From contig NC_082713.1 in assembly GCF_030144855.1 (NCBI RefSeq), forward strand, positions 21,576,001-21,640,000: a stretch of DNA of 64,000 nucleotides. Reading direction: 5' to 3'. The translations under genes and the position numbers were made by a program. The notes under the pieces were generated by a model that saw nothing but the letters and a program-made list of their open reading frames with translations, made no database searches and was not told where the DNA came from. Shown one piece after another: positions 15,406 to 64,000 of the stretch (positions within the stretch are counted from its first letter, which is position 1; each line of letters opens with the position of its first letter). This DNA comes from Hypanus sabinus. Lineage: Eukaryota.

Positions 15406-15504
15406 CCAAATGAAACTAAATTAAAGATTTATTTTTTCATTATTTTTGTAAATGATAGATATTTATGGTTTTGCACATTATTGCTGCCACAAAAAACCAT
15501 ACCA

Positions 15505-19392: not shown

Positions 19393-19861
19393 TCCTACTT
19401 AATTACCTACCTATCGTGATGTAGTATGAGGCCATTCAGCCCATTAAGTCCATGCCAGCTTCCCTCTCCTTAATTCCCTGTCATCTTCCAACTTATTATT
19501 CTGCATGCTCTCCAATTAGCTTTTGGATTTTTTTTATCACCTAGCTGCACTAAAGGATAACGTACAGGAGACATTTAAACTGACAACACATCGTTGGAAT
19601 GTGGGAGGGAACCAGAGCAGAAATACATGCTGTCAAAGTGAGAATGTGATAGCACCTTTGTGGTAGCTCAGTAGTGTAGTGTTTAGCCCAATACTTTACA
19701 GTGCTAGCGACACGGGTTCAATACCCATCACTGCCTGTAAGGAGTTTGTATGTTCTCCCTGTGACCGTGTGGATTTCCTCCAGCTGGTCAGGTCTCCTTC
19801 CACAGTCCAAAGACGTATCAGTTGGAAGGTTAGTTTGTTATTCTTAATTGTCCCATGATTG

Positions 19862-23619: not shown

Positions 23620-24680
23620 TTGCATTTAAGAGAGTCCAGAGAAAGCTCATGGGAATGAAAGGGTTAATATATGAGGAGCATTTGGTGGCCCTGGGCTTGT
23701 ACTTGGTGGTGTTTAGAAGAATGAGGGAGGATTTCATTGAAAGCTATTGAATATTGAAAGGCCTATGTTGTCACTTGAACAAAGTCACCAGAGAGATACA
23801 GTTGATAGATACAAAAAGTAGACTTTTTATTTAATACACACACTCCTAAATAAGCTGGCAGCCTTTTGGAGTTATGAGTGAAGTGGGGGGGGGGGGGGGA
23901 GGGTAAAGAGAGAGGGGGGGTAGAGAGAAAGGGGAGAGTGAGTGAGAGTGAGAGGAGAGAAAGGCAGAGACCTTTTCAGAGCAAGAGCTCTACTCAACCC
24001 AATGCTACAAAACTTTTTATGTGCTAAAGGTCAAAGGGCAATTCCATATTTATAATTCATCCACAATGCTTTCTTTGAACTTCACACAAATGTCACACCT
24101 CCTGCTTCACACTCACAGAACATATACCCAAATAATGAATTTAAATCAGCATTGTCTGGTCTTCCAATGAACTGTGGTATTGTTCAATCAATTTGGTCCC
24201 CTGCCTTAGAAACCCATTGTTCAGTGTTGCATTTTAGATTCAATCCATAGTTCATATTCAAAACTGAAAACTGGTGGCTGAAGACAGTCGCTGAAGTTAT
24301 TTGCTATATGTGCTAACCCCCCCAAAAAGCACTCTAATAGCCTAGTTAGAGTGGATGTGGAGAGGATGTTTCCTACAGTCTAGGACCAGAGAGCACAGCC
24401 TCAGTATAGACAGATGTCCTTTTAGAACAAAGACAAGGAGAGATTTCTTCAGCCAGAGAGTGGTGAATCTGTGAAATTCATTGCAACACATGACTGTTGA
24501 GGCCAAGTCATTGGGTATATTTAAAGCAGAAGTTGGTAGATTCTTGATTAGTAAGGGCATCAAAGGTTATGGGGAGAATGCAGAGGAAAAGGTTTGAGAG
24601 AGATAATAAATCAACCGCGATGGTGTGGCAGAGTAGACATGCTGGGCTGAATGTCCTAATTCTGCTCCTATATTTCATGA
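23620..24680 (+). mobile_element. CR1 3' end inserted in a SINE and split by a solo LTR
   Basis: CR1 sequence reads through GAAAG-GCCTA|insert|GCCTA-GTTAGAGTGGATGTGG; SINE halves at ~23520-23617 and ~24681-24900. Confidence 0.75.
23766..24339 (-). mobile_element. Solo LTR (574 bp)
   Basis: 5-bp TSD GCCTA (23761-65 / 24340-44); TGTTG start and near-inverted CTAATA end; minus-strand AATAAA at ~23826. Confidence 0.65.
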
Positions 24681-26198
24681 CCTCAAAGACATACTGGAAG
24701 GTGGGTTTGATTGCTGACTGTAAATTATACTCAGTGTAGGTGGATGCCAGGAGAATTGAGGAGAGCTGATGAGCTTATTGGAGAGAGGAGGTCACAGGGC
24801 CAATGAATGAGGTAATGGTATAGTTCAGGATGTCTTCATTGACTAGATGGGCCAAATGGTCCTTTTCCCCCATCATAAGAGAATATGAGAATATAATACG
24901 AGAACATCTTTTACCCAGAGCTGGAAATCTTGGAGTAGCAATGTGAAGATAGATACTGAATCGTGTTCTCCCCTCAGGGATAAAAACACAGAGCTTCTGA
25001 TTGCAACAAGAAGTTAATTATTGTTTTTAGTTTATAAAGGACAAGTCTATATAAGAGAAATTTCTGCATGTCCAATCCACGTTGAAGGAAAGCTCAATTG
25101 CCCACAACTAGCATTATTTCTGCCTTGTTTATATGAGTCATTGAAAAGGAGTTACCAACTAATTACAATAGATAACTCTATTAATGACTTGTATTAAATA
25201 AAGGAAAAAAAAATCATCTTTATTTTAGAGAGAGGTGTCAGAGTTTGAAGAACAGCCCCAGGTGAGGAAATGGCCCTCTCAGGCTCACAGTGATTTAATA
25301 TTGACAAATGACGCATGTGGAACATTTGTTCCTGTTTCTCCTCGTGATTCCTCAGCCCTCTGACCAGGGGAACTAGCCTGCGGTATTATTGGCATGAAAT
25401 TTTTGATTCCCGTGTTCCACTGCAGCTAGATTGGTTCATCAAGTCGTGCTTTCCTAATGCTTTCTTGACAAGTATTGCATTGTTAATTGATTATAAATAT
25501 AGGTGTGTTATGAGTCAGCGAATCCGAAGAGTCAAGTAAAAGATTTCGAATAATCCTTGATCGTCACTAATAGAAGCAAGGAAATCAAGTTTCCTATCAC
25601 AATGAATGCTTATATAAGGATTCTTCTTTTTAAATTTCTGCATTAGTTCTTTAAATTTCAGTCAAATTGTTGCCATTGATTAAAACATTTTAGTTAGATC
25701 TTACCAGGCTATGAATGAAAATTATATTAAAAAAATATAGAAGCAAGAGTTTGAACAGCCCTTTGAGCCTTTCTGTTATTCAAGGCGTTTGCCTCAGATC
25801 CCACTTTTCAACCTGATTCCTATAAATCTTAACATCCTTGTGATCCAAAAATGAGTCCATCTTTGTATGAATATACACAAGGACTCAGGTTTAGAGCTCT
25901 GTGGAAAGAAGAATTCCAACGATTCCTAATTTTGACTGAAAGAATTCCTCCTCATCTCTCCATCAAGTTGTTGACCTCTCATTCCAAACAATCATGATAA
26001 CAATTGTCATTCAGTTGTCTGAATAATGCATCATTAACTGATGTTTATGACACAAAAGTAAAATCGTTTTATTCATTGCACCTCTGTGACAGGCTTAAAG
26101 GTATGCTGATTTTTGATAAAATCCCAGGACGGTACTGGTTTCACCACCAATGTGGGATTAGAAATCCCTCTGCCATTCCAGACATTTGCTGTGCCTAA

Positions 26199-35101: not shown

Positions 35102-35607
35102 TATGTATAGTAGTGTACAAAAGCCTTAGGCACATACAATGTCTATAAAAAGTATTCACATCCCTTGGAAGCTTTTATGTTTTATTGTGTTACAACATTG
35201 AATCACAATGCTTTTAATTTGGCTTTCTTTGACACTGATCAACAGAAAAAATACTCTTTTGTGTCCAAATGGAAACAGATCTTTACAAAGTAATCTAAAT
35301 TAATTACAAATAGAAAACACAAAATAATTTGTTACAGAAGTATTCACGTCAGTATTTAGCAGATTGCTTTGGCAGCAATTACAGCCTTGAGTCTGTGGGG
35401 ATAGGTCTCCATCAGCTTTGCACATCTGGACACTGCAATTATCCCCCATTCTTCTTTACAAAACTGCTCAAACTCTGTTGGATTTAATGGGGATTGTGAA
35501 TGAACGGCCCTTTTCAACTCCAGCCACAAATTCTCAATTGGATTGAGGTCTGTACGCTGACTTGGCCACTTCAGGACACTAACTTTACAAACAAGAGGAA
35601 ATCTGTG

Positions 35608-35752
35608 NNNNNNNNNNNNNNNNNNNNNNNNNNNNNNNNNNNNNNNNNNNNNNNNNNNNNNNNNNNNNNNNNNNNNNNNNNNNNNNNNNNNNNNNNNNNN
35701 NNNNNNNNNNNNNNNNNNNNNNNNNNNNNNNNNNNNNNNNNNNNNNNNNNNN
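35608..35752. other. Assembly gap (145 N)
   Basis: Run of N. Confidence 1.
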
Positions 35753-36117
35753 CCAGGCAGCATCTATGAACAAAGTACAGTTGACGTTTCAGGCCAAGAC
35801 CCTTCAGCAGGACATTAACTTTGTTGTTTTTAAGCCATTCTTGTGTAGCTTTGGCTTTTTGCTTGGGGTCATTGTCTTGCTGGAAAACAAATCTTCTCCC
35901 AAGTCACAGTTCTCTTGCAGACATCATCATGTTTTCCTCCAGGGATTTCCCTGTATTTTGCTAAATTCATTTTACTCTTTACCTTCACATGCCTTCCAGG
36001 GCCTGCTGCAGTGGAGCATCCCCACAGCATAATGCAGACACCACCATGCTTCATTGTAGGGATGGTGTGTTTTTCTTGATGTGCCCTTCGTTATAGGGCC
36101 CCTGCCCTCTCCTCCTT

Positions 36118-36155
36118 CAGTCCTGATGAAGGGTCTTGGCCCGAAACGTTGACTG
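36118..36155 (+). ncRNA. Minimal type I hammerhead ribozyme motif in a Penelope terminal-repeat fragment
   Basis: CAGUC-CUGAUGA-A-GGGU(CUUG)GCCC-GAAA-CGUU-GACUG: helix I CAGUC/GACUG, complete core boxes, helix II, palindromic ACGU in place of helix III. Activity not shown. Confidence 0.65.
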
Positions 36156-38439
36156 CTCATTTCAACGGATGATGCCCGACCTGCTGAGTTCATCCAGCTT
36201 GTTTGTATGTGTTGAGTTTTGTTGTATGTGTGGTCTCTCCCATCTCAGCCATGGAAGCTTGTATCTCCTCCAAGTTGTCATAGGTCTCGTGGTAGCCTCC
36301 CTCACTAGTCCCCTTCTTGCGTAATCATTCAATTTTAGAGGGCAGCCTGCTCCAGTCAGATTTACAGTTGTACCATATTCCTTCCATTTCTTGATGATTG
36401 ACTTCACTGTACTCCAAGGGAAATTTTGTGACTTGTAAGTGTGCTTGATCCCTTGGAATCAATTGAAACACCTTGAATGAACACAGGTCTCCAATAACAG
36501 TTCTCAATTTAATTAATTATTTGACTTCTAAAACCAATTGGCCGCACCAGTGATAACTTGGTCTGTCTTATTAAAGAGGGGTGAATACTTATGCATGAAT
36601 TATTTTGTGTTTTATATTAGTAATTAGCTGAGATCACTTTATAGAGATCTGTTTTCACTTTGTCATGAAAGAGACTTTTACTATTGATCTGTGTTAAAAA
36701 AGCCAAATTAAAGCCATTGTGCAAACACGAGATGCTGAAAATTCACGCAACACACACAAAATGGCGATGGAACGTAGCAGGCCAGGCTGCATCTATAGGA
36801 AGAGGTACAGTCAACATTTCAGGCCGAGACCCTTTGTCAGGACTAACTGAAAGAAGAGAAATGTAGTAAAACAATAAACCATGAAAACTTCCCAGGGGTG
36901 TGAAAACTTTATAGGCACTGTATGTGCTTTTGACTTTTGCACAGTGCTGTACCTGATGCTAAATGCTCTCCATATGCAAGGCCATGCAATGAGCATTAGC
37001 ACGCAATGAAACCACGGAAGTCATCAGAGCCAATTTCAACATTCCTCTCATCCAATGTCCACATACAAGCACCTTTCGGTGATGATTACTGAATATTGTG
37101 CAGGAGCAGAAAACCTGACTGTTTTTTTTCTCACCTCTCAGACTCAGCGGTATTGGTTACCCTCCTTCACCCTGTCAATCCTGTCTTGGCTTGACAGGAA
37201 GACCGCAGCTGATAATTTTCATTCCTGTGTGAATCAGTAGCATTTTGCTCAGTTCAGCTGCTGACAAGCCAGCAGGGACCACATTGGTTTTTTTTTGCTT
37301 TTGCCATGTTTATCAACATAACCAATAACCAGTGGTTTTCATGGAAAGATGGAATGTGCGAAAAAATACCAAAATGCTAGATAAAGGCTTCGGAAAATCC
37401 CACATCATAAAATCGCACATGTGCATAATCAAATAAATAAATTGCTTAAATTAGCTTTTGTACAACATTTACATAGCAGTTGAAAGGAACTCATTGAAAG
37501 CACATGGAATTTTAATCACAGGTGCCAGAATTTTGTTTGATTGGTATGGCTTCTTGTGTGGTTGTGTATATTTTTATCAAGTCAAAATTGTGGTTTCCTG
37601 AAACTATTGACATTAATTTTATGTTGAGAACAGTTTAATTTGCAGTGTGTGTAAGATTGGCCCAAGATCACATCTATAATTTGTATTCCTGTGGCACTTT
37701 TAAGGAAATATTCCAATTCACTTCTTAAGTGATAGTTTGCATGGGCATAAGAGCTAGGGGAACAGTCCAGAGGGTAGATGCCAGAGAATGAAGGGTGATG
37801 TGAGGAGTTAAGCATGATTGAGAATTTTTAATTGGAGACCTTTGGAAAATTTGAAGTCAATGCACATCAGTAACTACAGGAATGATTTCGTGATTTTGAT
37901 CTTGTGAAGGATAAACTATTGGAGAACTCAGCAGCAAGCAGACGCTACTCAAAAAGTCAAATAGCATCTGCGAAGGCAAAGGAATCGCCATTTTGTTTGA
38001 TAGTCTGCATCTGGACTTTATGTTGTGTCTTGACCCAAAAGGTTGAGTGTCTCCCTGCTGCAAAGTTGCTGCTTGACCGACAGTTCCTCCAGCAGTTGTA
38101 TTTTTGGCTCCAAGTTACAGCATCTGGAGTCTGTTCTGTCTCTAAACTTAAAAACGCTTTAGGAGTTTAGTTTGAAAAGCATGAACATAGAAAATGCAAC
38201 ACAGTATTGTCGCTTCTGTTCACAATGCTGCTTTGACCTTTTAATCTACTCAAAGATCAATCTAACCCTTCTCTCTCATATGGCCCTCCATTTTTCAAAC
38301 ACTGATGTGTCTATTTAAGAGTCCCTTAGATGTCCCTAATGTATCTGCCTCTACCACCACCCCCAGTAGTGTGTATGTGTTCCTGTGAGTGTTGAGCATC
38401 TGTAGTGTTAAATCTGTGCATTAATAAGCTAATTGTTCC

Positions 38440-41729: not shown

Positions 41730-42722
41730 GAACGGGAAGGAGGAAGGGTCCCGGGGGAGGCATGAAGAGATAAGGGGTCAGAATGGGGAATAGAAGAAGA
41801 GGTCAGAGGGAGGGATTTTTTTTTTACCAGAATGAGAAATTGATATTCATGCCATCAGTTTGGAGGCTACCCCTACAGAGCATAAAATATTGCTCCCCCA
41901 ACCAGAGGGTGGCCTCATTGTGGTACAAGAGGAGGCCATAGACCGACATATCAGAATGGGAAGAAAAATTGGAATTAAAATGTCTAGCTACCGAGAAGTT
42001 CCACATTTGACAGGTGGAGTGGAGGAGCTCGATGAAGTGATCCCCCAATTTACGACAGACCTCACTAATGCAGAAGAGGCCATATCAGGAGCATCAGACA
42101 CAATAGACGACCCCAGCAAGCTCGCAGGTGAAGTGTTGCCTCACCTGGAAGGACTGATTGGGGCTCTGAATGGAGTTGAGGGAGTAGGCGAATGGGCAGG
42201 AGTAGCATTTTGGCCGCTTGCAGGGGTAAGTGCTGGGAAGATGATTAGTGGGGAGGGACGAATAGACAAGAGAATCACAGAGGGTGCAATTGCTGCAGAA
42301 AGTGAAGAGAGGACAGAGGTAAAGATATGTTTAGTGGTAGGATCCCTTTGGAGATGATGGAAGTTATGGAGAATGAGGTGTTGGATGTGGAGGGTCATAG
42401 GGTGGTAGGTAAGGACAACAAGAACCCTTTCACTGTAAGGTGGTGTGAAGGTGGGGTGAGTGCCGTTGTTTGGGAAATGGGGGGGATGAGGGTAAGGGCA
42501 GCATAATTATGGAGAAAGGGGAACAACGTTCTTCGAAGAAGGAGGACATCTCTGTTATTTTGGAAAGGAAAGCCACATCCCAGGAACAGATGCTGGGGAG
42601 ATGAATAAACTGAGAAAAGGGAATATCATTTTTACAGGAACGAGGGTGGGAAGAAGTATAGTCTAAGTAACCACATGAACTGTTTGGTTTATAAAAGATG
42701 TCAGTCAACAGTTTGTCTCTGG
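41730..42722 (-). mobile_element. Penelope-like element fragment (RT C-terminus and GIY-YIG)
   Basis: TDIFYKP...YLDYTSSHPRSCKNDIPFSQF...; LQRDPTTKHIF; EQYFMLCRGSLQTDGMNINF. Confidence 0.85.
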
Positions 42723-42769: not shown

Positions 42770-43475
42770 AGAATTTAGTGCTGAGTGTTAATGCTACAGT
42801 ATCCTTGCATTCAACATTAACAAGACCAAGGAACTGATAGTGGATTTCAGGAAGGGGTAATAGGAGAACCCACACCAGGGATCAGCGGTGGAAAAGGTGA
42901 GCAGCTTCAAGCTCTTTTTCCCAACATCTCAGAGGACCTATCTTGTGCCCAAAGCATTATACAATCATGAAGAAGGCCAGTGGCTCTGCTTTGGAAGGAG
43001 TTTTGAAGTTTGAAAAGCCACCAAAGACTGACAGGTTTCCCTTGACTATGGTGGAGAACCTTCAGACTGGCTGCATCACAGCCTAGCATGGAGGCTCCAA
43101 CGTATAGTATTGCAAGAGGGTACAGAGGGTTGTAGGCTTTACCAGCTCCCACTACAGGTGCAATCATCCCCACGATCAAGTGCATCTTTGGGGCTCCATT
43201 ATGGACACAATTGTCCTCACCATCCAGGACAATCCCTCTTCTCATTACTACCAACAAATTAGAGGTACAGGAGCCTGAAGACCCACTCTCAGTGATTCAG
43301 ATGCAGCTTCCTTTGCTCTCCTTTGGAAAGATCTATGAACACTGCCTCAGAACTCCTTTGTTTTGCTTTATTTAGTTAGTTTAATAATGCATTGATTTTT
43401 ATATTTCGCTTTGTACTGATGCCACAAAACAATAGATTTCATGTCACACATCAGTGGAAATAAATCTGATCCTTC
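42770..43475 (+). mobile_element. Rex1/Babar-type LINE 3' fragment
   Basis: LNINKTKELIVDFRK-like start; GCITA; tail AAATCTGAT. Confidence 0.7.
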
Positions 43476-50956: not shown

Positions 50957-53098
50957 TACATTGAACTCCTGGGGCCTAAGAACTTATTCCTGTACCTATG
51001 AACCAATGAACACTACAGCATTATTCCTTTTTTTTCCTTTTTAACTTCTCAATTACATTGTTATTTATCATAATTTTATATCTATGTACTGTACCACTGC
51101 TATAAGACGTCAGATATGGCAATGATACGAAATCTGATTCTGATTTTGTTTGTACTATCAACCGATTCTTGCCAATGTGTAATCTGAAAGTCCTAGAGTT
51201 TTATTTTGGCACAATGACTGTTTTTGGGACATTCTCAAACACCTTCTTAAATTCCAAACATACCATGTCCATAATTTGTTTTTTGTCTATTTTACTAATT
51301 AAATCCTCAATAAACTGCAGGAGAGGCATCATTTCTCTTTCCTAAACCTATGCTGACTGTCTAATCTCATTAATGCTTTTTGTTTGAAATGCTATTAGTT
51401 GTGTAGAGGTCTCTGCCTGTAAGGGTTTTTAACTGGCTCAATAATTCTTGATTATTACCCTATAAAAATTCTCCATCATGAAGTTTCTGATTTACAATGA
51501 TACTGATAATAGTATAGCCATATGGACAGTTAAATGGCACAGGAAGTCAAAAGAAAGACATAGTTAAATAGGAACATCACACCTCTCCCTCTTTGTTATT
51601 CTGTCTGTCTGTCTGTCTGTAACTCAAAACCCCTCTCCCTCTCTTTCACTCTCTCTGTCTGTCTCTCTCTTCTCCCTCCCCGATTGCTATTCTGCACTCA
51701 AAGCTTCTACATCCACAGAGCCTCAGATCCCTCACTGTGTGTTTGGAGATTATATTTTGGACAAATATGTCAACATTTAGGTGTAAGTGCCAGACCCTAT
51801 TAATCTAGGAATCATTTGCCGCTTCTCCTGCTGCTGTTTTTGCAATTGCTGCACAGAAAGAAATTTTTAAAAGATAGTTGAATAAAAATGTAGCTATTAT
51901 GACTCAATTCCATACTGTAATCAAATAAAGAGAAGTTAAACTGCCAAAAGGCGTATTTAGGACAAACAGTATTATTACCATGTTGAACGGAACATAAGTT
52001 TTAATGGCAAAATACCGTCATTTAAGGAGTATTTACGCCCTAAATCTGGAATGGTTGGTTTTGTTTAAATAGCTATTATTCTGGTGTGTTTAAATTTCAA
52101 TAATTTAACTAATAACCCAGCAGTAAAATATAGGCACCATCCTATGAATAAAGTTGAACTTCTATTTTATCAACTGCACGGCCGCACTGTATTGAGAAAT
52201 AATTTCAACGAGTTGTCAGGGGAGACATTCAATAAATTAGATGGCTGTTTCTTACAAATTTTGTTGCATTTTTATCCAGTAAAACTACTGCTAAAATGTA
52301 TATTTTTTTTGCGAATGTCAGTTCAGCAAAATCATCAGTAGGTGGGACTTTTATTTTACCCATTTGTTCCATTCACAAAATGGCTCCTTCAACTGTTCTT
52401 GTGATTAAATGGTCAGAGACTGCTACTGGGTTGTTATTCAAATCCAGATCATGCATCAGATCTCCCAGTGGGAAACAGTGGTGGCACAAAGACTCATGAT
52501 TAGAAGGTAGAATAATTACTTCAAAAGGGGGAGCAACAACGAGTTTTTTTGGAAGACGTCCTAACAATGGACATTCTATGTTCAATTTTAGGACTAAAAT
52601 TCAAACATTCATAACATTCAAAGCAGCTGTTGTGGATACGGTCCATGGGAGATAGGAAATCAATACGCTTCATTTATCAATAACAGAGTCCTTCCACAAA
52701 ATAATCTCCAATTGATGGTGGCCAGGATTGTTGCCAATTCTGTCTGCTGTGAGCTATCAGGAAATGTATAAAATGTAAGGCTGGTATTTATAGTCAGTTA
52801 TAGACATTTAAAGTTTCTAATTACAAGCTCCATTTTAAGGTAAGGAATATTTTTATGAAGGCTACACACACAAAATGCTGGAAGAACTCAGCAGCCGAAG
52901 CAGCATCTATGGAGATAAAGTACAGTCAAAATTTCGGGCCAAGACCCTTCGGCAGGATTTCCAGCATCTGCAGATTTTCTCTTGTTTGTGTTTTTATAAA
53001 GGTTATTAGTTTTAATATAGCAGATTAATAACCAACCTAAACATAATTATAATTGTATTAATGATATTTACTACATTATAAAAAACAAAACTAAATTA

Positions 53099-53497
53099 CA
53101 GTACCATGCAAAGGTCTTAAACACATGTAAAACAATTCTGTAAAGATACTTTCAAAAATAATGAAATGAAAAGTTTCTAAATATCAAAAAATACTCAAAT
53201 AATAACAAGCAGTAAACAGTAAAAAATGACATCAAATCAATATTTGGCATTCATCTTTTGCCTTTAAAACCGAATCAATTCTCTGCTGTGCAGTTTTATA
53301 AGAAAATTGGCTGGTAGGTTGTTCCAAACATCTTGGAGAATTTGCCACAGATTTTCTGCAGACTTTGGCTGTCTCGCTTGCTTCTGTCTCTACAGGTAAT
53401 CCCAGACAGCCTCGATAATGTTGAGATCAGGACTCTGTGGAGGCCACACCATTGAAAGTATATAAAAAGTCTAGGGCACAACATTTGCACAGTACTG
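53099..53497 (-). mobile_element. Short Tc1 derivative with CAGTACTGTGCAAA-type TIRs
   Basis: TA-CAGTACCATGCAAAGGTCTT...TTTGCACAGTACTG-TA; minus-strand remnant QPKSAENLWQILQDVWNNLP. Confidence 0.75.
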
Positions 53498-53829
53498 TAT
53501 ATTAAACATAAATCACTTTGGAGCATTCTGAGGTTGAGAAAAGTACCAAAAATTGTCTTTTTGTTCTTTCCCCTTTGTCATTCCACTTAAAAGAACTTAC
53601 AGCAAGAGCAAGGCAAACATTAGAAATGCCATGATCTCACGCCTCCTCCCTGGTTCAGTATTATATTAGAGCTCAAATAATAATGTCCCAAAGCCAATTG
53701 GTTGCGAAACCATTTATTTAACTATAGCGCACCCTAGTGACCTAAGACATCATCGGCAGTCTGTTGATCTAAGAATCTACTCATTAAAAAACATTGCTTT
53801 CTTGCACAATTTCTGTTTATATCATTTCT

Positions 53830-54300: not shown

Positions 54301-54539
54301 GTGCTTTGTTTTAACCAGTGATGAATCCAATTGTCCAGGAACTGAAACACTCATCTCCTCTACCACACTCATAGCTATACATTCTGACCTTTGATTTGGT
54401 ATATCTACCTCAATATTCTTTTTGCTAAGAAACTACAGATAATAATCTGTTAGAGTCTGTGGCTTAGTCTTGACCATAATCCACTAACAAAATCTCTCAG
54501 AAGAATCTCTTTCTAAGTGCTACTAAATTATTGATGGTT

Positions 54540-54912
54540 GAGGATCCCTACCTCCCCTCCCACAATCTCTATGAACCACTAGCGTCAGGAAGGAGATACA
54601 GGAACATCAGGAGTAGCACTGTCAGACTGGGTAACAGCTTCTTCCTCCAGGCTGTGAGACTAATGAATACCCTGCCACCAGTGAGGTCTCGTCACTAAGA
54701 CAGGAAGTTTTTTTACTGAACTGTTTATTGTTTATCTGTGCTGCACACTACAGGCACTTTGAATTACATTTTAAAAACTTACTTGCAGTAATATTTTGAT
54801 TTACGTGATGTGGGTGATATATGTTTTATGTGAACACCATGATTGTGAGAAACAGTGTTTTGTTTGGTTGTATATATGTAGAGTCTACACGACAATGAAC
54901 TTGACTTGAACT
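54540..54912 (+). mobile_element. Rex-type LINE 3' end
   Basis: PL.SGRRYRNIRS.T.RLGNSFF.QAVRL; (AACTTG)-like tail. Confidence 0.7.
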
Positions 54913-55750
54913 TGCTGAATGGATTGCTCTTCAGTTCAACGTTATACAGCACATCATATATGCAGCACAAAAATGCACCAATGTACACCACAATGGACCC
55001 AACAGAATATATAATAACACAAAAAGTGGATTACAGATAAATAGTATGGCATCATAACCTAATGAAATACAACAAACTATAGAGTGTAGCACAACACAAC
55101 GTCACACAGCATAACCCTATGTAACAACCCAATTAGACCATAACATTAATTCAAAGTTACAAATGGATCTTTTCCTCCCTCTGAACTACTTTTCACTATA
55201 TATGAGGAGATTGCTTTACAAGTTGGCGACTGATACTGTGCCTCTGGGACTCCAAAGAGCCCAATCAATGCCTCTTTCTGCCACTTACTTTCTTCCACCC
55301 TCAGTTTAATGAGCTCTTTCACTGTGGTGTGGGGGAAATATTGACCACACTCTGTGCTCTCACCCACACAGTTTGAAGGCTGGTCATACACCGACGCCTC
55401 CTCTGTCCACTACTCTCGTCAGCTTCTTGTATATTCAAATTACCATACCGGGCCATGATGCAATCTGTCAGGTTACTTCCAACAGTACGTCTGTTAAATT
55501 GTTAGACTTTTCGATGACAAGCCAAACCTTCAAAGCTGGTACTCTTTCCTTATAATTGCTTTGATGTGCTGGTCCAGGACAGGTCATCCAATATGTTAAT
55601 GCCCAGGAATGTAAAGCTGCTAACCCTCACCGGTGCTGCTCCCCCAGTGTAGACTATTTCCCCTTGCTGAAGTTCACAATCAGCTCTTAAGTGTTGCAGC
55701 TCCAGTTAACTAGTGTCATGAGGCTGCAGAACATTATGCACTTCATTATA

Positions 55751-56200
55751 TAGTACTGTGCAAAAGTCTGAGGCATATATATACAGCTCGAGTGCCTAAG
55801 ACTTTTACACAGTCCTGTATTTGTCAACATGGAGCAGAAAGCAAGTTTGTAAATCTGACAAGGGCAAAAGAGGTTGGGAATGGTGAGCGTGGAGCACTGT
55901 GGGAGGGGTGTGGGACAGGTGGCAGAGAAGGAGTCCCAGGGGTGGTGCAGGTACAGACACACCCAGCCCTGAGACACCAGACAAGGTCACTTGATTCCAA
56001 ATAACTGCTTTATTGATCATTACTGAATGCCTTTCTGGTGCTTCCTACTCCATCTCTTCTCCCTCCCCCCTTTCATAACCATGATTCCCTTCTCCCTGCC
56101 TCTTCCCACTCTCAGTCCACAATAGAGATCTGTATCAGAATCAGGTTTATCATCACTCACATATGTCATGAAATTTGTTGCTTTTTGTGACAATACAGTA

Positions 56201-56203
<3 letters not shown>
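55751..56203 (-). mobile_element. MITE plus cargo, copy 1 of a putative composite transposon (second MITE reduced to CAGTACTGT and (TA)n)
   Basis: 67-bp palindromic MITE at 55751-55817; 55818-56195 aligns in reverse complement to 62628-63041. Confidence 0.7.

Positions 56204-56251
<48 letters not shown>
56204..56251. repeat. (TA)n microsatellite
   Basis: About 24 TA units. Confidence 0.95.
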
Positions 56252-56255
<4 letters not shown>

Positions 56256-56814
56256 ATGTTCATCGATTGGTTGATAATTAATATAAATAGTACATTCAGA
56301 AATCTGATGGTGTAGGGAAAGAAACCGTTCCTTAAACATTGAGTGCGTGTCTTCAGGCTCCTGTACCTTCCCCCTGATGGTAGGCATGAGAAGAGGGCAT
56401 GGCCTGGGGTAATAATGCTCCTTCATGTTGGATGCTGCCTTTTTGAGGATGTTTTGAAGATATCCTCAATGCTGGGGAGGCTACTCTCCTCTTCTTGGGT
56501 ACAATGCAACATAGTGCTAAATAGCACACTATGTAACATAATTGAATACAAGATAATGCAGTGTAGGGAAGAGCTCTGCAGCATGATGTGAAACAGTAAG
56601 TAAAGACTAATACGTTTCAATAGAGTTATGTGTGCAATATCTCTGGCATGGTAGGGTGTTAAATGAATGTTCGCTTAAGCTTCCAACATTCTGTGATGCA
56701 AAAAGCCTGCCAGAGACCATAAACAAAAATCTTTATGACTGGATTGTATTGCAGAACTGTACTGGCAGAAATGGGGGTGGGAAATAACGTTTAGTTCTCA
56801 GCTGGACTTCATTT

Positions 56815-58465
56815 TTAATTCTCAGACTTGGTCAGATTCAATGCCGCTTCAAACTCTTATTAAGTTTTCTACAGTGTATCGAAGCCTATTGTGAAGATTC
56901 GGAATACTTTTAGAGACATTGACAATGGATTAAATCTGATTTGTAGTGGAGTGGGAAAGAAATCTGCAAGTATTCTAAAGGAATGAAAAGGTGAGAAGCA
57001 AATGTATTAAATTCACCCATCTTTTGAACAACATGCATTCTATTATTAATAATCCAGAACCTTTTTATCCACGGCCATAATCTTACATCATCCTTAGATA
57101 TATAAACAGTGCCTGATGTGATGTGTATTAGCAAAGTCCAAAATTCAAAAGCAGATTTTAAGCCTTATCCGATATAGGTATATATCTATAGGTTTCCTCA
57201 CTATAGGGAGATGTACTGTATTAACCTACTCTCCAAAGATTAGCTTCCTTCCCTCTCTTGGCTCAGCAGTGAGGTCTAACAGCCAATACCCACGATTTGA
57301 CTGATGGGATCCCCCTCTCTACCAAGAAGGAGATTCTTCCAGCTACCAAAATAGTTTAAATACAGTTTATTTTATTTTTACTGACATATGCTTAATTTTA
57401 GACTTATTGTTCTGAACACATATTTAAAACTCACAGGGGATTTATAAAAGATTTGTGAATTATAGAAGATTTATAAACTTCAAAAGATATCCAAACACAG
57501 GTACAATTCTTACAAACTAAAAGAACATACCAATAAGTGCAGACAAACGAGTCATCCATTGCAGAAAACAAAGGCTAAGGAATGAATTCAAGTTCTTCTT
57601 TCTCTCGACCTGTCTTTCTGTTAATCTTCTTGTCATTCCCAACAATCCCCAGTGCATTCTAACATTTATACTGTTTTGCTGCTAGTTGACATTGTTTGCA
57701 TGTGATGTGTTTTAGATAATTTTGCTGGGACAAAGTAATTCACACAGATGATCTAAAAGTTTCTGTGGACAGAGATACAGACTCCCAAAACAAACGCTGT
57801 ATGACCTGAGTCTCTGAGTAAACAGATACCCCAACCATTGATGGATTATATCTGTGACCATGTTTGATGTGCTAAGTGACAAAATCAATTTATTCTGCAA
57901 GCTTATTTGAACTCAGTCACAATAGTGCAATCAACCCAGCCAGTCCTGCTTGTTTGCAATGTTATCTTTTTAACTTCAGACTTTGTACGTTAAAAATTAA
58001 AGGCTGGCTCTTGCTTATATAAAGAAGCTGAGCAAAGAATATTGGTTAGAAGTTTAACTAACATCTCTGACCTTTTGGGAGGTCATGCTGCTGTGATAGA
58101 AAGCTGAGGTTAACAATAAAACTCTAAGGCTCTGGAAAATGAATATCCATCAATCAAGTTTAACTGTCAGACATTGTCAGATTGGAGGTTGCTTTAACCT
58201 TTATTAGGCTTCAACAAGGTGTTGAAACTCATTGTGAAGATTTAGAATACTTTTAGAGATATTTACAATGAATTAACTTTGGCTTGTGGTGGAGCAGGAA
58301 TAAACCTGTAGGAAATGTATTCTGAAGGAATGAAAAGATGAGAAGCAAATGTAATGAAGGCACCCATTTTTACAACCAACTCTCAGTCCATTATTAATGA
58401 TCCAGAACCTATTATCCATGGCCATAATCTCAAATCATCCTAAAATACATGTACCTACAAGCCTG
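56815..58465 (+). repeat. Diverged ~300-bp direct duplication (56815-57115 and 58159-58465)
   Basis: Shared blocks in the same order: TCAGAC.T.GTCAGATT, ATTGTGAAGATT..GAATACTTTTAGAGA, GGAATGAAAAG.TGAGAAGCAAATGTA and ATCCAGAACC...GGCCATAATCT. Confidence 0.85.
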
Positions 58466-58639
58466 GCAATTCATCCTCTTGATGGAAGTCGTTATTAGCT
58501 CATGGAATAAACAGGGGAGATGCAGCACGCATAAGCTATTGGCTTACAGACAAAATACAGACAGATGAAACTGAATTGCATCTTTTTTTTGATGTGATGC
58601 ATTTTATGGCAGATCCCAATTTTTTTCCTTGCGTAAAAG

Positions 58640-58972
58640 GATTGAGTGGACTGCCAGAGGTTTTTTACTGGACAGAGATGGCTAAAACACAGGGGCATAA
58701 TTTGAAGGTGATTGCAGTAAAGCATAGGGGACATTACAAAGGTAAGTTCTTTAAACAGAAAGTGATCAGTCTATGGAACACCCTGTCAGGGATAGTGGTA
58801 AAGGTCAATACATTAGAGGCATTTAAGAAACTTTTAGATAGGCACATGGGGAGCCATGCAGGAGGGAACAGTTAAATATTTCTTACAGTAGGTTAAAAGG
58901 TTAGAACAACATCATGGGCTGAAGGGTCTGGACTATGCTGTAATATTTGATGTAATATTCTAATGTTCTATG
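58640..58972 (+). mobile_element. CR1 3' end
   Basis: KTQGHNLKV...FFKQKVISLWNTL...AFKKLLDRHM. Confidence 0.8.
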
Positions 58973-59514
58973 GCTACAGGATTGTTTATACCCAGGACCA
59001 AGCTCAAATGAAGACCATAAGACTCTAAGACATAGGAGAGAATTAGGCTGTTCAGCCCATCAAGACTGCCATTCTATCATGGCTGATTCATTATCATTCT
59101 CAATCCCATTCTCCAGCCTTCTTCTCACATTCTTTTCTGTTCAAAAACCCATCAGTCTCTGCAGATTCCACCTAGGAGTTGGAAAGGATGTCTTCCCTTA
59201 AGACACTCTCCCCATTTCAACTGGACAAAAACAACACACACTAAGACAGCTGAGGAAGAGAGAAAGGACACAGGGGAGAGGTAGAAAAAAAATAAACAAG
59301 ACTCAAAACTCCTAATAACTGAAGTGCACGCTAGGAGAAAATTACTGTGTGGCAAAAGGCCAGCAAACCAGCCAGGGCAGGATATGTTTCCAGTCATATC
59401 CTCTAGGGGTGAGAATTACTTCTCATTTAAGCAATGCAAAATTAAATGTTATGTTCTCATACAAAATGTTGCAACAAATAGTCCATTGCTGAAACAATTA
59501 TAGTTGAATTTATT

Positions 59515-59610
59515 ATTACAATCATGTTATGGTTCTAATTAAATTATAGTCATGTTATGATTCTCATTAAATTATAATCATGTTATGATTCTAATTAAAT
59601 TATTATCGTG
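59515..59610. repeat. 28-bp AT-rich tandem repeat (~3.3 copies)
   Basis: Unit approximately AATCATGTTATGATTCTAATTAAATTAT. Confidence 0.85.
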
Positions 59611-60983
59611 TAATAATTGGTGCATGTGGTTCAGCAAAGGAAGATATAACGGATTATCATGTATCATCTGAGCTGTCATCAGACTTCGGTGAACGATGTG
59701 GGTGTTAAGACTTGTGGTGTGAGAGCATCACTGTGCCGGCTGGGAAATAAAATTTTATTTGGTTTCTTATGAAAACTTGAGCTCTTTGAGGGCATCCCCC
59801 ATATAACTTTTAGTTAATGTGCCGACTTACTTTGTTCTACTCATATTTGTGTTCTGCAGATTCATATCTTGGTGCTCCACCATTTATGGCATCTGTTATT
59901 TGTTTTTGACCTGTGCATTATGTCCCTGCAGTGTTAGGTCTCATCTCTGCTCACCTGCAATACAAATTGTTTGTAGCGTGCAGCATATCTAACAGAGGGG
60001 CTGTGACTCTTGGGCATTTTCGACATGGACTAGTACAGGAATGGGATTTTTAAAAGACCAAAGATTCTGAACTTGTGTAACTGTTGTATCTACTAAGGTG
60101 GATTACTGGTTGGTGTGAGGAAACATTTAACCCTATGGTGGTGATACATCACAAAAATTGTCCGGCAATCTGGTCTTGCATTGACATCATTCACAGCATC
60201 TGCACATTCAGGAAACAGGAGAAGGTCTATATTGAGTGGATAGCCAGAGACTTTTCCCCAGGAGAGTGGAGGCATTTATGGCGGGGGGGGGGTGGATATC
60301 AGTGGTAGGCTTTTGAAACGGAGAATGGCAGGTGAATGGAATGCTCTGCCAGGGGTGGTGGTAGAGATTGATAGCTTAGGTGTATTTAAGAAGATAGAAA
60401 ATGACGGGCTATGTAGGACGGTAGGTACAGATTGATCTTAGAGTAGGTAAAAAGGTAGGAAAAATATCATGGGCTGAATGGCCTGAACTGTGCTGTACTG
60501 TTCAATGTTTTGTGTTACAAGGTAGCAATTATGATTTCCCTTACAACATTTGAAAAGTTTCTGGATGAGCATTTGAATTTGAATTCTTTAGACATAGAAG
60601 ATTATGGACCTAGTGCTAGAAAGTAGGATTAGTATGGAAGCCACTTGATCAACGGCATGGACATGCTGGGTCAAAGGGCTTGCTATTGTGTTACATAACT
60701 CTAAAGCAGGGATGTACTGAGCCTGCAGATCGTAGATTATACCCTAAAGTTCTAATTAATGTTATTTATTGCAGAACAAGGATTTTTGTGAATGGTGACT
60801 GGTGACTTCATTCATGGTGCATCAGACTGAATAAGCACAGAACAATCAATCCAGTTTTAGTTGTAGTAACTGACTGTTTTCTGACTGAATGAAGGTTTAA
60901 GTTGGGGTGTTCCCCAATGATTGAAAGTTGGGCCAATGTTTGGCATCAATGACATAGATTTAATGATACAAAACTTGGAAATA

Positions 60984-62279
60984 CAGTGAATTCTGGTTAA
61001 TTGGTCCATTGATTAATCATGGCAGCCTCTTATGTGGGACAACTCCTGAAGTACAGAAACTTATCAATAAAATAGTCAAGATTCCCTTTGTTTATTTGGA
61101 ACACTTTGCTGCTTAATTGGGACAAGAGACTGTTGCCGAACAGTTTCTAACTAGTATCATTTGCATGAACTTGTGTGGCTGTTAGATGTTACTCCAGGCT
61201 TAGAGCAAACAGTTTCTAAATAGGATGATTTTGCATGTGTTTGTGTTCAAAAAGCAGTGATTTTTATCACCGATAGTTGGCAAGAAATAAGCAGTAAGAC
61301 AGCTTAGAATTGCTTTGCTCACTGCATTTCATGGATTCAGACTTGGAGATGCCAGAAATGGCTGGGAGTGAAAATTAAATGATTTCACTACATCAACAAG
61401 TTAGACACTACAAAGAATTTGAAAGTATCGACAATTATCTTGAATGTTACAATGAAAATGAAGATTTGGAGGATGCAAACATCAAAAGCATTGCATGAAG
61501 GCAGTCTTTGCAATAGGAGTATGAGCTAATTCTGTTAATTTAGAGTCAATCAAAAGAAAGCGGCTACATATTAGTTGTCCGTCATTTGTGACAATGACAT
61601 TGAAATTTGTGCGGGAGAGCTTTTAGAGTACAAAACCCATTACATCAGGACAGTTCCACTCTCTTGGACTTGGAAGTCTATGGCCAGTGGTATGATTAGT
61701 CTTCACAAACTAGGATCTTCCTCGTCTGCAGTGGATAACCATGACTTCTACTGTGCCTTATCATGCCTGTTGCTCTGCACGAATTGCCTTCTTGGCCATT
61801 TGATCTCATCCACCCAGTTTGCTGGAGCTGACATGAATTGACAGGGATATGATGCCACCAGCTACCTTCACCTGGTTTAACCTGTCTGTAGACGTGCTGT
61901 ACCAGAATGTGGCCACTGTCATATGCAAAGAGTTGCAGTCACAGTTGAAAGCTAAGTGTCCGGCGAGGAGCTGTCCCAGAACTACACAACAAGCCCTTTC
62001 ACCAGAGGTGTTACCCATCACTGGAACCCCATACACGACAGCGTACACTGAATGAATTCATCTGTTGATAACTGGTATTAGGAACTAATACAGTTTTATA
62101 GTACTGCAGTAGCATTGGTAGTGTCCTAAATTATTTTGTATTTCATTTAAGTACATACATTGTTACTCAGTTAAATGTTCGTTTCTCTTTTTTATACCAT
62201 TTTAGCTATTTCCAAGAAATTTTGGCTAATTGGGCCAAATGTTCTGGTCTGATGTCTCCCAATTAACCGGAATCCATTG
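60984..62279. mobile_element. Tigger/pogo-like non-autonomous DNA transposon containing an RTE-like insert (~61575-62045), itself inside a CR1 remnant
   Basis: TIRs CAGTGAATTCTGGTTAATTGG / CCAATTAACCGGAATCCATTG; left TA; CR1-like sequence on both flanks. Confidence 0.7.
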
Positions 62280-62560
62280 AATGATGAACAGGGTACTGAT
62301 AAACTTCAAGAGCTGGAGACAGACAGGCACATGGCAGATGGAATTTAACACAGACAACGGAGTAGTCTTGAAGTTAGATGGAAAGAGCGAGGAGCAGAAT
62401 TAAGAAGTAATTGCACAGCGAGTACATGAATAATCAAGTCAAGTTGAGTTTCAAGTCGAGTTTATTGTCACATGTCCAAGTATGGTGAGGTACAGGTACA
62501 ATTAAATACTTGCCTGCAGCAAAGGTAGCCATTCAGATTACACACAAAACATAAATTATA

Positions 62561-63100
62561 TAGTACTGTGCAAGGGTCTTGGGCGCCTTTATATAGCTAG
62601 GGTGCCTAAGACTTTTGCACAGAATTGTAGTAATTTAATGTATTGCAATGTACTGCTGCCACAAAACAAAATGGCAGATGTGAGTGATGAAAAGCCTGAT
62701 TCTGATATGGGTCTCTATTGTGAAATGAGATTGTGAAGGGATCAGGGAGAACGGAATTCTGGTTGGGATAAAGGGAAGGGGGAGGAGAGGGAGTGGGAAG
62801 CACCAGACAGCCGTTCTGTAATGATTAATAAACAAATTGTCTGGAATCAAATGACCTTGCCTGGTGTTTAAGGACTGGGTGTTTCTACATCTGTGCCACT
62901 ACCCACCACCCCCCCCACCGCCGGTACTCCTTCTTTGCCACCTGCCCCACACCCCTCCCGTAGAGCCCCACCCTTGCCGTTCCCAGAATCCTTTGCTCTT
63001 TCCAGATTTCCAGATCACTCTCCATTCCACCTTGACAAGTACAGTACTGTGCAAAAGTCTTAGAACCCTAGCTATTTATATAGACGTTTGCACTGGACTG
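62561..63100 (+). mobile_element. Putative composite transposon: MITE (62561-62627), 414-bp cargo, MITE (63042-63100)
   Basis: Both ends are self-contained palindromic CAGTACTGTGCAAAAGTCTTAGGCAC-type MITEs, each TA-flanked and inverted relative to each other; cargo shared with 55818-56195. Confidence 0.8.
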
Positions 63101-63344
63101 TATTCAATAGGCTGAATGGCCTAATTCTGCTCCTATGTCTTATGGCCTTTATGGTCTTACTGTACAGAGAGTAACTAGAAAAAAAATACATGCAAAATAA
63201 AACAGTAGTGCAAAATAATTACAATCAGAGAGCTTGGTGCACATGTACAGAATTCTTCATTAGCTGGACTGGGTGAGAGAGCACTTATGAAACCAGACAG
63301 GGTCTTGAAATTCATCTAGAGATTGCATATAAATCTGGTCACTA

Positions 63345-63820
63345 CATTCTATTTGTATTGGTTTATGTTGTCACATGTACTAAGAAGCAGTCAATAGCTT
63401 GTCTTTCATATGGTTTATACAAACCAAATAAGTACACGGTGCATGGAGCTAGAATAAGGTAAAAACAATAGCAATGCAGAATAAGGTGCAAAAGCTACTG
63501 AAAAAAGTGCAATGCAGGAACTAATAAAGTGAAAAATCATAGTGAGGTAAATTGGAAAGCCGAGAGTCCATTTTATAATCTGTTTGAGAGTATGATAATA
63601 GTGGGATAGAAGAGGTCTTTGAGACCTGAGGTACATGATTTCAGGCTTTTGTATCTTCTGCTAGAAGGGAGGGGGGGAAGGGGATGTCCAGGGTGGGTGG
63701 GGTCTCTGATGATGCTGACTGCTTTACTGAGGCAGCAAGAAGTATGGACAGAGTCTATAGAGGGGAGGCTGGTTCCTGAGTTACACCGAGCTGTATCCAC
63801 AGCTCTCTTGCAGTTTGCTT
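63345..63820 (-). mobile_element. Rex-type LINE 3' end
   Basis: LPSIDSVHTSCCLSKAVSIIRDPTHPGH..PLPSSRRYKSLK. Confidence 0.8.
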
Positions 63821-64000
63821 AGCGGTGATGTGTGTGCCAAGCATTTAGGAATTATGTAAAGGTTAGTCCATGGAGTTCCGAAAATGGTTACTGGAATTGT
63901 CAGGGAGTGAGGGACCAACAAGGAAAAACTGGAGAAACTGTGACTGTTCTCCTTACATCCGAAAAAGTAGACAAGAGGTGATAGAAGGCTGCTCAGATGA

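What the first reader, a model, noticed from the sequence alone, without database searches (positions are those of the whole stretch)
55751..63100. Eukaryotic composite transposon: two tiny MITEs bracketing ~410 bp of captured DNA, cargo present twice in the window
Seen: 62561-63100 reads TA-[67-bp palindromic MITE]-TA...414-bp cargo...TA-[MITE]-TA. The two MITEs face opposite ways (central TAGCTAGGG vs CCCTAGCTA). The same cargo, with the same MITE junction (CTGTA.TTGTCAA), occurs inverted at 55751-56203 in unrelated flanks. The cargo is a mosaic: a piece of LINE tail (GTGAGTGATGA.AA.CCTGATTCTGA), a G-rich tract and an AATAAA at ~62826. The MITE also occurs without cargo (35108-36949, split by a Tc1), and its TIR is on a Tc1 remnant at 53099-53497. 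Established: Tc1 transposases act on the outermost TIRs and duplicate TA. Inference: two nearby MITE insertions were mobilised together, like a bacterial IS-cargo-IS composite, and spread the host fragment between them. Caveat: in copy 1 the second MITE is only CAGTACTGT plus (TA)n and abuts a LINE body, so 3' transduction is an alternative.
Basis: partly seen in the sequence, partly recalled or inferred. Interest (0 to 1): 0.72.

Follow-up and report, generated by a model that had tools for sequence, protein, structure and literature searches.

The report
Two mini-transposons bracketing LINE-derived DNA
In this stingray-like genome, two tiny palindromic Tc1-type transposons sit head to head around 410 bp of old repeat DNA and probably move as one 540-bp unit, but the supposed second copy in the window has only one of them and is still attached to its LINE.

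Summary
At 62561-63100 two complete Tc1-type palindromic mini-MITEs, each flanked by TA on both sides, lie head to head around 410 bp. The same 410 bp plus one MITE lies inverted at 55751-56205 (73-74% identity, E about 1e-77). Homology stops at the MITE's outer TA.

- The cargo is not a mosaic of host DNA. It is the last 77 bp of a LINE 3'UTR plus the 333 bp that follow it, and all of it is multi-copy.
- Copy 1 is not a second composite. Its "CAGTACTGT + (TA)n" is the LINE's own 3'UTR, and the LINE runs on into its ORF2 C-terminus (56485->56288). It is a one-MITE, LINE-attached form, possibly progenitor-like.
- In copy 2 the LINE is cut exactly at the left MITE, and the DNA beyond is unrelated.
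- Contigs of four public runs show single-copy-depth paralogues with the same left MITE/LINE-tail junction (at least 5 in one run). One firm paralogue, and two marginal ones, cross the cargo/right-MITE junction.
- No single other copy was seen with both ends.

First readers noted the same architecture in at least 9 other windows of this genome; none was followed up. Composite mobilisation through the outer ends is the best reading (about 0.6). It is a new variant of a known kind.

The parts
62559..62560 (.). outer TA left of the composite
   Evidence: TA precedes the TIR start (T)AGTACTG
62561..62627 (+). MITE_L: complete 67-bp palindromic Tc1-type mini-MITE. The outer arm carries four A>G changes that keep pairing as G.T.
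   Evidence: hairpin -18.4 kcal/mol, z -6.6. Present at the orthologous locus in runs X14, X15 and X18: contigs 62250-62615, 62476-62615 and 62253-62617.
62628..62629 (.). inner TA between MITE_L and the cargo
62630..62706 (+). cargo part 1: last 77 bp of a LINE 3'UTR in sense orientation, ending ..CCTGATTCTGAT. It is cut on its 5' side by MITE_L.
   Evidence: aligns with LINE copies ending at 43473, 40021 and 38619. Summed contig depth about 527,000 against about 20 for single-copy flanks.
62707..63039 (+). cargo part 2 (A'): 333 bp that follow the LINE end in both copies. It holds a G-rich tract, an AATAAA, a highly repeated core (about 62816-62875) and a C-rich tract. The last 40-80 bp are low copy.
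   Evidence: 76% identity to copy 1. local depths in X14: 246,761 at 62723; 405,596 at 62841; 4,797 at 62979; 382 at 63001; 281 at 63014.
63040..63041 (.). inner TA between the cargo and MITE_R
63042..63100 (-). MITE_R: 59-bp mini-MITE, inverted relative to MITE_L. The inner arm matches the TIR 22/22; the outer arm is decayed and has a deletion.
63101..63102 (.). outer TA right of the composite
55749..55819 (+). copy 1: outer TA, 67-bp MITE (55751-55817), inner TA. Same polarity towards the cargo as MITE_R.
55820..56133 (-). copy 1: A' (inverted)
56134..56287 (-). copy 1: complete LINE 3'UTR, including the intrinsic CAGTAC motif (56195-56203) and a (TA)24 run at 56204-56251
   Evidence: (56137-56407 matches 43473-43224, E 1e-14)
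56288..56485 (-). copy 1: C-terminal end of LINE ORF2 (..PGHALF..LPSGGRYRSLK..FFP..IRFLN), 5'-truncated near 56485
   Evidence: tblastn E 2e-5 against the ORF at 63800->63576; the same motif occurs at 8932->8735, 54534-54674 and 43215-43283
53097..53499 (-). internally deleted Tc1-like element with the same TIRs and a transposase C-terminal fragment
   Evidence: DDE_3, E 5.6e-5, below Pfam's cut-off
35106..36951 (+). solo mini-MITE without cargo, split in its loop by an unrelated Tc1-like element. The N run 35608-35752 inside it was left untouched.

Best explanation
Copy 2 (62561-63100) is a 540-bp non-autonomous Tc1/mariner element of composite origin.

Proposed steps:
1. A 5'-truncated LINE lay upstream of the sequence called A' here.
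2. One 67-bp palindromic mini-MITE inserted at a TA downstream of A'. That stage is what copy 1 still looks like.
3. A second mini-MITE inserted at a TA inside the LINE 3'UTR, 77 bp from its end, in the opposite orientation.
4. The Tc1 transposase that moves the solo MITEs can then synapse the two outermost TIRs and cut and paste the whole MITE-cargo-MITE unit into new TA sites, leaving the rest of the LINE behind.

Shown: the anatomy; the Tc1 affiliation of the TIRs; that both inner junctions recur in paralogues; and that homology ends at the outer TA.

Inferred: that the whole unit moves by transposase action on the outer ends.

Copy 1 is not a product of that reaction. It is a one-MITE, LINE-attached relative of the same lineage. 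It could be the progenitor arrangement or a recombinant with one of the many LINE-A' copies.
For: - Both MITEs of copy 2 are complete, with inner TIRs and a TA on each side. This is the signature of two insertions, not of capture between one TIR pair.
- The TIRs match a Tc1-like element with a DDE_3 fragment, and a solo MITE is present.
- The LINE part of copy 2 stops exactly at MITE_L. The left flank is a different repeat, not LINE.
- Homology between copy 1 and copy 2 ends at the outer TA of the shared MITE.
-, left junction: contigs at single-copy depth span 62590-62722, that is MITE_L loop and inner TIR, the LINE tail and the start of A'. They are records 2, 11, 12, 18-22, 26 and 27, five of them in run X18 alone, with long unaligned left parts.
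-, right junction: record 7 bridges the cargo/MITE_R junction (62938-63075, 83% identity). Records 30 and 31 reach 22-29 nt past it.
-, depth: beside MITE_R (63001-63014) it is 12-43 times the single-copy level.
- Leads not tested here: at least 9 first-reader notes of 319-551-bp MITE-cargo-MITE units with a LINE tail on other pieces of this genome.
Against: - No other copy was seen with both MITEs at once, so the two junctions could belong to different arrangements.
- Copy 1 lacks the second MITE and continues into the LINE, so the window's 'two copies' do not show composite transposition.
- TA flanks are uninformative, because every MITE has them.
- LINE tail plus the start of A' is itself very abundant: about half of the LINE-tail depth continues into A'. 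Part of the read support may therefore come from LINE copies.
- Contigs show presence, not structure, beyond about 150 nt.
- No intact transposase was found in the window.
Confidence: 0.6

Rival explanations
1. LINE-driven copying. A LINE master carried A' and the MITE(s) downstream of, or inside, its 3'UTR. Read-through RNA was then reverse-transcribed, giving 5'-truncated copies (3' transduction or a long-UTR subfamily).
For: - Copy 1 is exactly LINE ORF2 end, 3'UTR, A' and MITE.
- The LINE-tail-to-A' junction is very abundant in reads (246,761 at 62723 against 526,752 at 62691 in X14).
- One contig (record 3, 62627-62768) has the tail and A' without MITE_L.
- MITE_L's outer arm has four A>G changes of the kind RNA editing of a hairpin would leave. 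This is anecdotal.
Against: - Both window copies end exactly at the MITE's outer TA, with no poly(A), no microsatellite and no recognisable target duplication.
- Copy 2 would have to be 5'-truncated exactly at the outer base of a hairpin.
- Depth falls towards the supposed 3' end (382 and 281 at 63001 and 63014), which is the opposite of a retroelement profile.
- Other LINE copies in the window end at ..GATTCTGAT without A'.
Confidence: 0.15
2. A static structure spread by recombination or duplication. The MITE-cargo-MITE arrangement arose once. The few relatives come from ectopic recombination or gene conversion with the thousands of LINE-A' copies, or from segmental duplication, not from transposase action on the outer ends.
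For: - The cargo shares 77 to about 300 bp with a very abundant repeat, which is an ample substrate for ectopic exchange.
- Copy 1 has the structure expected of a crossover within A' between a composite and an inverted LINE-A' copy.
- The copy number beside MITE_R is modest, at 12-43 times the single-copy level.
Against: - The homology boundary lies exactly at the TIR end plus TA.
- Several paralogues share the MITE_L junction.
- There are many independent sightings of complete units elsewhere (untested).
Confidence: 0.1
3. Coincident hot-spot insertions. Solo MITEs inserted independently at the same favoured TA sites in different copies of the LINE-A' repeat, so nothing was ever co-mobilised.
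For: - The MITE and the LINE-A' repeat are both present in thousands of copies.
- Tc1-type elements have preferred TA contexts (established knowledge).
- The LINE UTR holds a near-copy of the TIR tip: CAGTACAGTGCAA against CAGTACTGTGCAA.
Against: - Homology between copies does not resume beyond the MITE.
- MITE polarity and junction are identical in copy 1, copy 2 and a paralogous contig.
- Copy 2's left flank is not LINE.
Confidence: 0.05

Closest known systems
MADE1 / MiHsmar1 of primates (palindromic mini-MITE of the mariner Hsmar1; PMC5224488, PMC1784062)
   Same: It is two terminal inverted repeats joined by a few bases, has a TA target, has no coding capacity, occurs in thousands of copies and has hairpin potential.
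   Different: The TIR here is Tc1-like (CAGTACTGTGCAAAAGTCTTAGG), with about 26-bp arms and a 15-bp asymmetric loop. In the passages read, MADE1 is described as a solo element, not as pairs carrying DNA.
Engineered Sleeping Beauty 'sandwich' transposon (Zayed et al. 2004, as described in PMC4229213)
   Same: Two complete Tc1-family elements lie head to head around a cargo, and transposition goes through the outermost ends.
   Different: It is man-made, and its inner ends are mutated to block cleavage. Here the arrangement is natural. The inner TIR tip is intact in MITE_R, and also in the read consensus for MITE_L's inner TIR (62623 A>T, 62625 T>C).
Bacterial composite transposons, especially TIME-COMPs bounded by two Tn3-derived MITEs (PMC13367494)
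   Same: Two non-autonomous miniature elements bracket intervening DNA and mobilise it with a transposase supplied in trans.
   Different: They are bacterial, belong to the Tn3 family and carry resistance genes. Here the host is a vertebrate, the family is Tc1/mariner and the cargo is junk repeat DNA.
Plant Pack-MITEs / transduplication (PMC2817404)
   Same: They are MITE-sized elements whose interior is genomic or TE-derived DNA, amplified as a family.
   Different: Their cargo lies between a single pair of TIRs and is thought to be acquired during repair. Here each end is a whole MITE with its own inner TIR and TA.
LINE 3' transduction (named only in the discussion of PMC2817404; otherwise from my own knowledge)
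   Same: A LINE 3' end and the DNA downstream of it are copied together, which is the arrangement of copy 1.
   Different: There is no poly(A) or tail repeat at the end, the ends coincide with TIRs, and copy 2 has no LINE body.

Membership tests
Tc1/mariner-derived palindromic MITE | TIRs shared with a transposase-bearing Tc1/mariner element | tested here: met
   The element at 53097-53499 has the same TIRs (23/28 and 20/28) and a DDE_3 fragment, E 5.6e-5.
Tc1/mariner-derived palindromic MITE | TA on both sides of every copy | tested here: met
   True for all five TIR-bounded elements in the window.
Tc1/mariner-derived palindromic MITE | Short, non-coding, two TIRs joined by a short loop, many copies | tested here: met
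   59-67 bp, hairpin z -5.4 to -6.6. Summed depth is 142,000-390,000 against about 20. There are 666 loose ends with the TIR consensus at 62590 in X14.
Composite transposon (two element copies mobilising the DNA between them) | Two complete element copies, each with both ends, flank the cargo | tested here: met
   Met in copy 2. Not met in copy 1, which has one MITE only.
Composite transposon (two element copies mobilising the DNA between them) | The whole unit recurs at unlinked loci, with homology ending at the two outer ends | tested here: inconclusive
   The right outer end is shown. Each inner junction is seen in paralogous contigs. No single copy was seen with both ends. At least 9 untested first-reader notes exist elsewhere.
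Composite transposon (two element copies mobilising the DNA between them) | Target-site duplication around the whole unit, and empty sites | tested here: inconclusive
   TA lies at 62559-60 and 63101-02, but any MITE has this. The runs laid carry MITE_L at the orthologous site. No empty site was available.
Composite transposon (two element copies mobilising the DNA between them) | A transposase able to act on the outer ends | not testable with these tools
   Only decayed Tc1 remnants are in the window.
LINE 3' transduction / LINE-borne copy | LINE body contiguous upstream of the carried DNA | tested here: inconclusive
   Met in copy 1. Not met in copy 2, where the left flank is unrelated.
LINE 3' transduction / LINE-borne copy | 3' end with a poly(A) or tail repeat, and a target duplication | tested here: not met
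   Both copies end at a TIR plus TA. No A-run or repeat is present and no shared flank words were found.
Pack-MITE / transduplication | Cargo sits between one pair of TIRs, with no inner TIRs | tested here: not met
   Inner TIRs and inner TAs are present on both sides of the cargo.

The most novel reading that the evidence does not exclude
The window may hold both stages of the birth of a vertebrate composite transposon. Copy 1 would be the progenitor locus itself (LINE, A' and one MITE, before or without the second MITE). Copy 2, 6.3 kb away and inverted, would be a local-hop daughter of the finished MITE-cargo-MITE unit, which then spread through the genome.
Probability: 0.12. Interest if true: 0.65.

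Novelty: new variant of a known kind. Interest (0 to 1): 0.42.

Why it matters
Composite transposons are textbook in bacteria and are built on purpose in Sleeping Beauty 'sandwich' vectors. I found no description of a natural, amplified MITE-cargo-MITE family in a vertebrate in the papers I searched.

If genome-wide data confirm it, this family would show three things. Tc1-type transposases mobilise arbitrary DNA lying between two nearby mini-MITEs. DNA transposons and LINE fragments can fuse into new repeat families. Such units must also be recognised in repeat annotation, where they would otherwise be split into MITE, LINE and 'unknown'.

The cargo here is junk repeat DNA, so no host function is at stake.

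Tried and rejected
- **Protein word searches** with ORFs across the cargo/MITE_R junction and the LINE C-terminus, meant as handles to fetch paralogous loci, found no candidates. The ESM Atlas gave only unnamed chordate clusters.
- **Metagenome scan** for the most conserved cargo core found 0 matches. No ray DNA is reachable in the public collections on hand. The costly representative-protein search was not spent on non-genes.
- **Rfam** on 55000-64000 gave only sub-threshold miRNA-like hairpin hits on the MITE and the (TA)n.
- **A decayed second MITE to the right of copy 1.** The best candidate, 56686-56747, scores no better than 8% of random windows, and no gapless TIR-like site lies in 56250-57500. 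Rejected as unsupported.
- **Copy 1's TACAGTACTGTA as a MITE remnant or excision scar.** Rejected, because it aligns with the LINE-intrinsic motif in three other LINE copies.
- **The cargo as a SINE.** The LINE-derived tail lies at the 5' side of A', not at the 3' end, and no pol III-like head was seen. Rejected by inspection.
- **Composite inserted into the abundant repeat on its right.** The left flank does not continue that repeat.
- **Pfam on large window ORFs** gave only DDE_3 fragments, so the LINE clade could not be named.
Full report
**Observation.** Copy 2 reads as follows:
- outer TA (62559-60)
- MITE_L (62561-62627, 67 bp)
- inner TA (62628-29)
- 410-bp cargo (62630-63039)
- inner TA (63040-41)
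- MITE_R (63042-63100, 59 bp, outer arm decayed)
- outer TA (63101-02)

The two MITEs are inverted relative to each other, and each points the same loop polarity at the cargo. Copy 1 lies inverted: outer TA (55749-50), MITE (55751-55817), inner TA (55818-19), then the cargo from 55820.

The two copies align over 442-481 bp at 73-74% identity (E 4e-77 to 6e-80). They share the junction TTGACAA(G/A)-TA-CAG. By segment, identity is 70% in the LINE tail, 76% in the rest of the cargo and 83% in the MITE. It is 41% in the 17 bases beyond the outer TA, which is no homology. The TIR 22-mer has 4 hits against 0 expected. All three MITEs fold as hairpins with z -5.4 to -6.6.

**What the MITE is.** The same TIRs bound a 400-bp deleted element at 53097-53499. 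Its interior still encodes the ..WPPQSPDLNIIEAVWDYL.. end of a Tc1/mariner transposase (DDE_3, E 5.6e-5, below Pfam's cut-off). A solo MITE without cargo lies at 35106-35136 and 36924-36951, split at a loop TA by an unrelated Tc1-like element. Every copy is flanked by TA. In four public whole-genome runs, summed contig depth over the MITE is 142,000-390,000 against about 20 for the unique flanks. The closest known thing is the human mini-MITE MADE1, which is two 37-bp repeats plus 6 bp (PMC5224488).

**What the cargo is.** It is not a mosaic of host DNA.
- The 'LINE tail' is the end of the 3'UTR of a LINE.
- In copy 1 this tail is contiguous with the rest of the UTR and with the C-terminal end of ORF2, encoded on the minus strand at 56485->56288. 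tblastn gives E 2e-5 against the ORF at 63800->63576, and the same motif occurs at four more places.
- The block 56137-56407 matches another LINE copy at 43473-43224 (E 1e-14).
- Three other LINE copies in the window end at ..CCTGATTCTGAT and are followed by unrelated DNA.
- So the cargo is the last 77 bp of a LINE (62630-62706) plus the 333 bp downstream of it (A', 62707-63039).

A' is repetitive in its own right. In run X14 the local depth is 526,752 at 62691 (LINE tail) and 246,761 at 62723, where the consensus equals copy 1. It is 405,596 at 62841 and 4,797 at 62979, but only 382 and 281 at 63001 and 63014. Roughly half of the LINE tails therefore run on into A'. Only the last tens of bases next to MITE_R are low copy, at 12-43 times the single-copy level across the four runs, counting matches of 80% identity or more. 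The tool warns that these sums are not copy numbers, so I use them only as orders of magnitude.

**Copy 1 is not a second composite.** Its 'CAGTACTGT' aligns column for column with the LINE-intrinsic motif GCAGCAGTACAGTGCAA of the other LINE copies and of copy 2 (alignment A2). The (TA)24 at 56204-56251 sits in the LINE's AT-rich UTR, and LINE sequence resumes right after it. No TIR-like site lies in 56250-57500. The best gapped candidate, 56686-56747, is not better than chance. Copy 1 is therefore a 5'-truncated LINE, then A', then one MITE.

**Copy 2 does look like a composite.**
- The LINE is cut exactly at MITE_L's inner TA.
- The DNA left of MITE_L is a different repeat, not the LINE.
- Both MITEs keep their inner TIRs and inner TAs. 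This is the mark of two whole insertions rather than of DNA captured between one TIR pair.

**Family evidence from reads.**
- Ten listed contigs span the MITE_L loop and inner TIR, the LINE tail and the first 16-44 bases of A'. Eight span 62590/62593/62594-62722, one 62576-62722 and one 62592-62750. They are records 2, 11, 12, 18-22, 26 and 27, five of them in run X18.
- Each of these contigs is at single-copy depth, 80-86% identical, with long left parts that do not match this locus. They are paralogues sharing the left junction.
- Record 7 (62938-63075, 83% identity) bridges the cargo/MITE_R junction by 36 bases. Records 30 and 31 reach 22-29 bases past it.
- Record 3 (62627-62768) has the tail and A' without MITE_L, so copy-1-like forms also exist elsewhere.
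- Contigs from X14, X15 and X18 run from the unique left flank into MITE_L, so the insertion is shared at the orthologous site.
- No contig is long enough to show both ends of another copy.

**Leads from the scan.** First readers described the same architecture on other pieces of this genome in at least nine notes: s1-210458, s1-207126, s1-191547, s1-203464, s1-219716, s1-179865, s1-188045, s1-207124 and s1-213490. These units are 319-551 letters long, two mini-MITEs bracketing cargo with a LINE tail. None was followed up. I could not read their sequences and count them as leads only.

**Mechanism.** The best reading (about 0.6) is this.
1. A MITE inserted downstream of a LINE-A' copy.
2. A second MITE inserted in the LINE UTR in opposite orientation.
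3. The Tc1 transposase then acted on the two outer TIRs and moved the 540-bp unit into new TA sites.

The anatomy, the Tc1 affiliation, the recurrence of both junctions and the boundary at the outer TA are shown. The joint movement is inferred.

Rivals:
- **LINE-driven copying (0.15).** It explains copy 1 and the abundant LINE-A' junction. It does not explain ends that coincide with TIRs, the lack of a tail repeat, a depth that falls towards the supposed 3' end, or copy 2's truncation at the outer base of a hairpin.
- **Spread by ectopic recombination or duplication (0.10).**
- **Independent hot-spot insertions (0.05).** This is contradicted because homology does not resume beyond the MITE.

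The origin of copy 1 stays open. It may be the progenitor locus, a recombinant between a composite and one of the many LINE-A' copies, or a LINE-borne copy.

**Comparison with what is known.** It works like three known systems:
- a bacterial composite transposon;
- the MITE-bounded TIME-COMPs (PMC13367494);
- the engineered Sleeping Beauty 'sandwich', described as two complete elements head to head around a cargo (PMC4229213).

It differs from plant Pack-MITEs (PMC2817404), where the cargo lies between a single TIR pair. I file it as a new variant of a known kind. Membership in 'composite transposon' is only partly tested.

**Housekeeping.** The N run at 35608-35752 was left as it is. Read laying was given 1,301 letters.

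Noticed in passing
window 63103-63149: Right after the composite's outer TA lies the last ~46 bp of a hyper-abundant repeat (..GGCCGAATGGCCTAATTCTGCTCCTATGTCTTATGG). Summed depth is 1.4-2.8 million against about 20. Other copies lie at 59011-59060, 16530-16572, 24645-24683 and 19348-19399. It is 5'-truncated exactly at the composite's edge.
   Followed up: partly
window 62561-62587: MITE_L's outer arm differs from the family TIR mainly by four A>G changes on the + strand. All four keep the hairpin paired as G.T (G.U in RNA), and the inner arm has none. This resembles an RNA-editing footprint, but there is no A>G excess elsewhere in the copy (6 A>G against 5 G>A relative to the read consensus).
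   Followed up: partly
window 62643-62655, 56195-56207 and the LINE copies in alignment A2: The LINE 3'UTR carries a near-copy of the Tc1 TIR tip: CAGTACAGTGCAA against CAGTACTGTGCAA. It might also matter for transposase binding or target choice.
   Followed up: partly
window 55751-63100: The two cargo copies form about 460-bp inverted repeats 6.3 kb apart, with their shared MITE ends pointing outwards, so the outermost ends of the whole 7.35-kb stretch are again TIR plus TA.
   Followed up: no
window 15499-15779: A tRNA-type SINE (..GGCTTAGCGGTTAGCACAAC.. to ..GTATCTCTAAATGTAAAT) is inserted inside another copy of the same LINE 3'UTR tail (15440-15498 and 15780-15815).
   Followed up: no
window 55600-55745 and 54534-54674: More LINE fragments lie next to copy 1. 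One is a LINE-like stretch (identified by my recall, untested) abutting the MITE's outer TA. The other is a +-strand ORF2 C-terminus at 54534-54674 (tblastn E 2e-5).
   Followed up: partly
window 56814-57103 and 58159-58450: A direct repeat of about 295 bp at 77% identity lies between the two cargo copies. Its nature was not examined.
   Followed up: no
window 42430-42708 (-): An ORF with ..DIFYKPNSSCGYLDYTSSHP.., which I recall as typical of Penelope-like reverse transcriptase regions. Pfam gave no hit.
   Followed up: no
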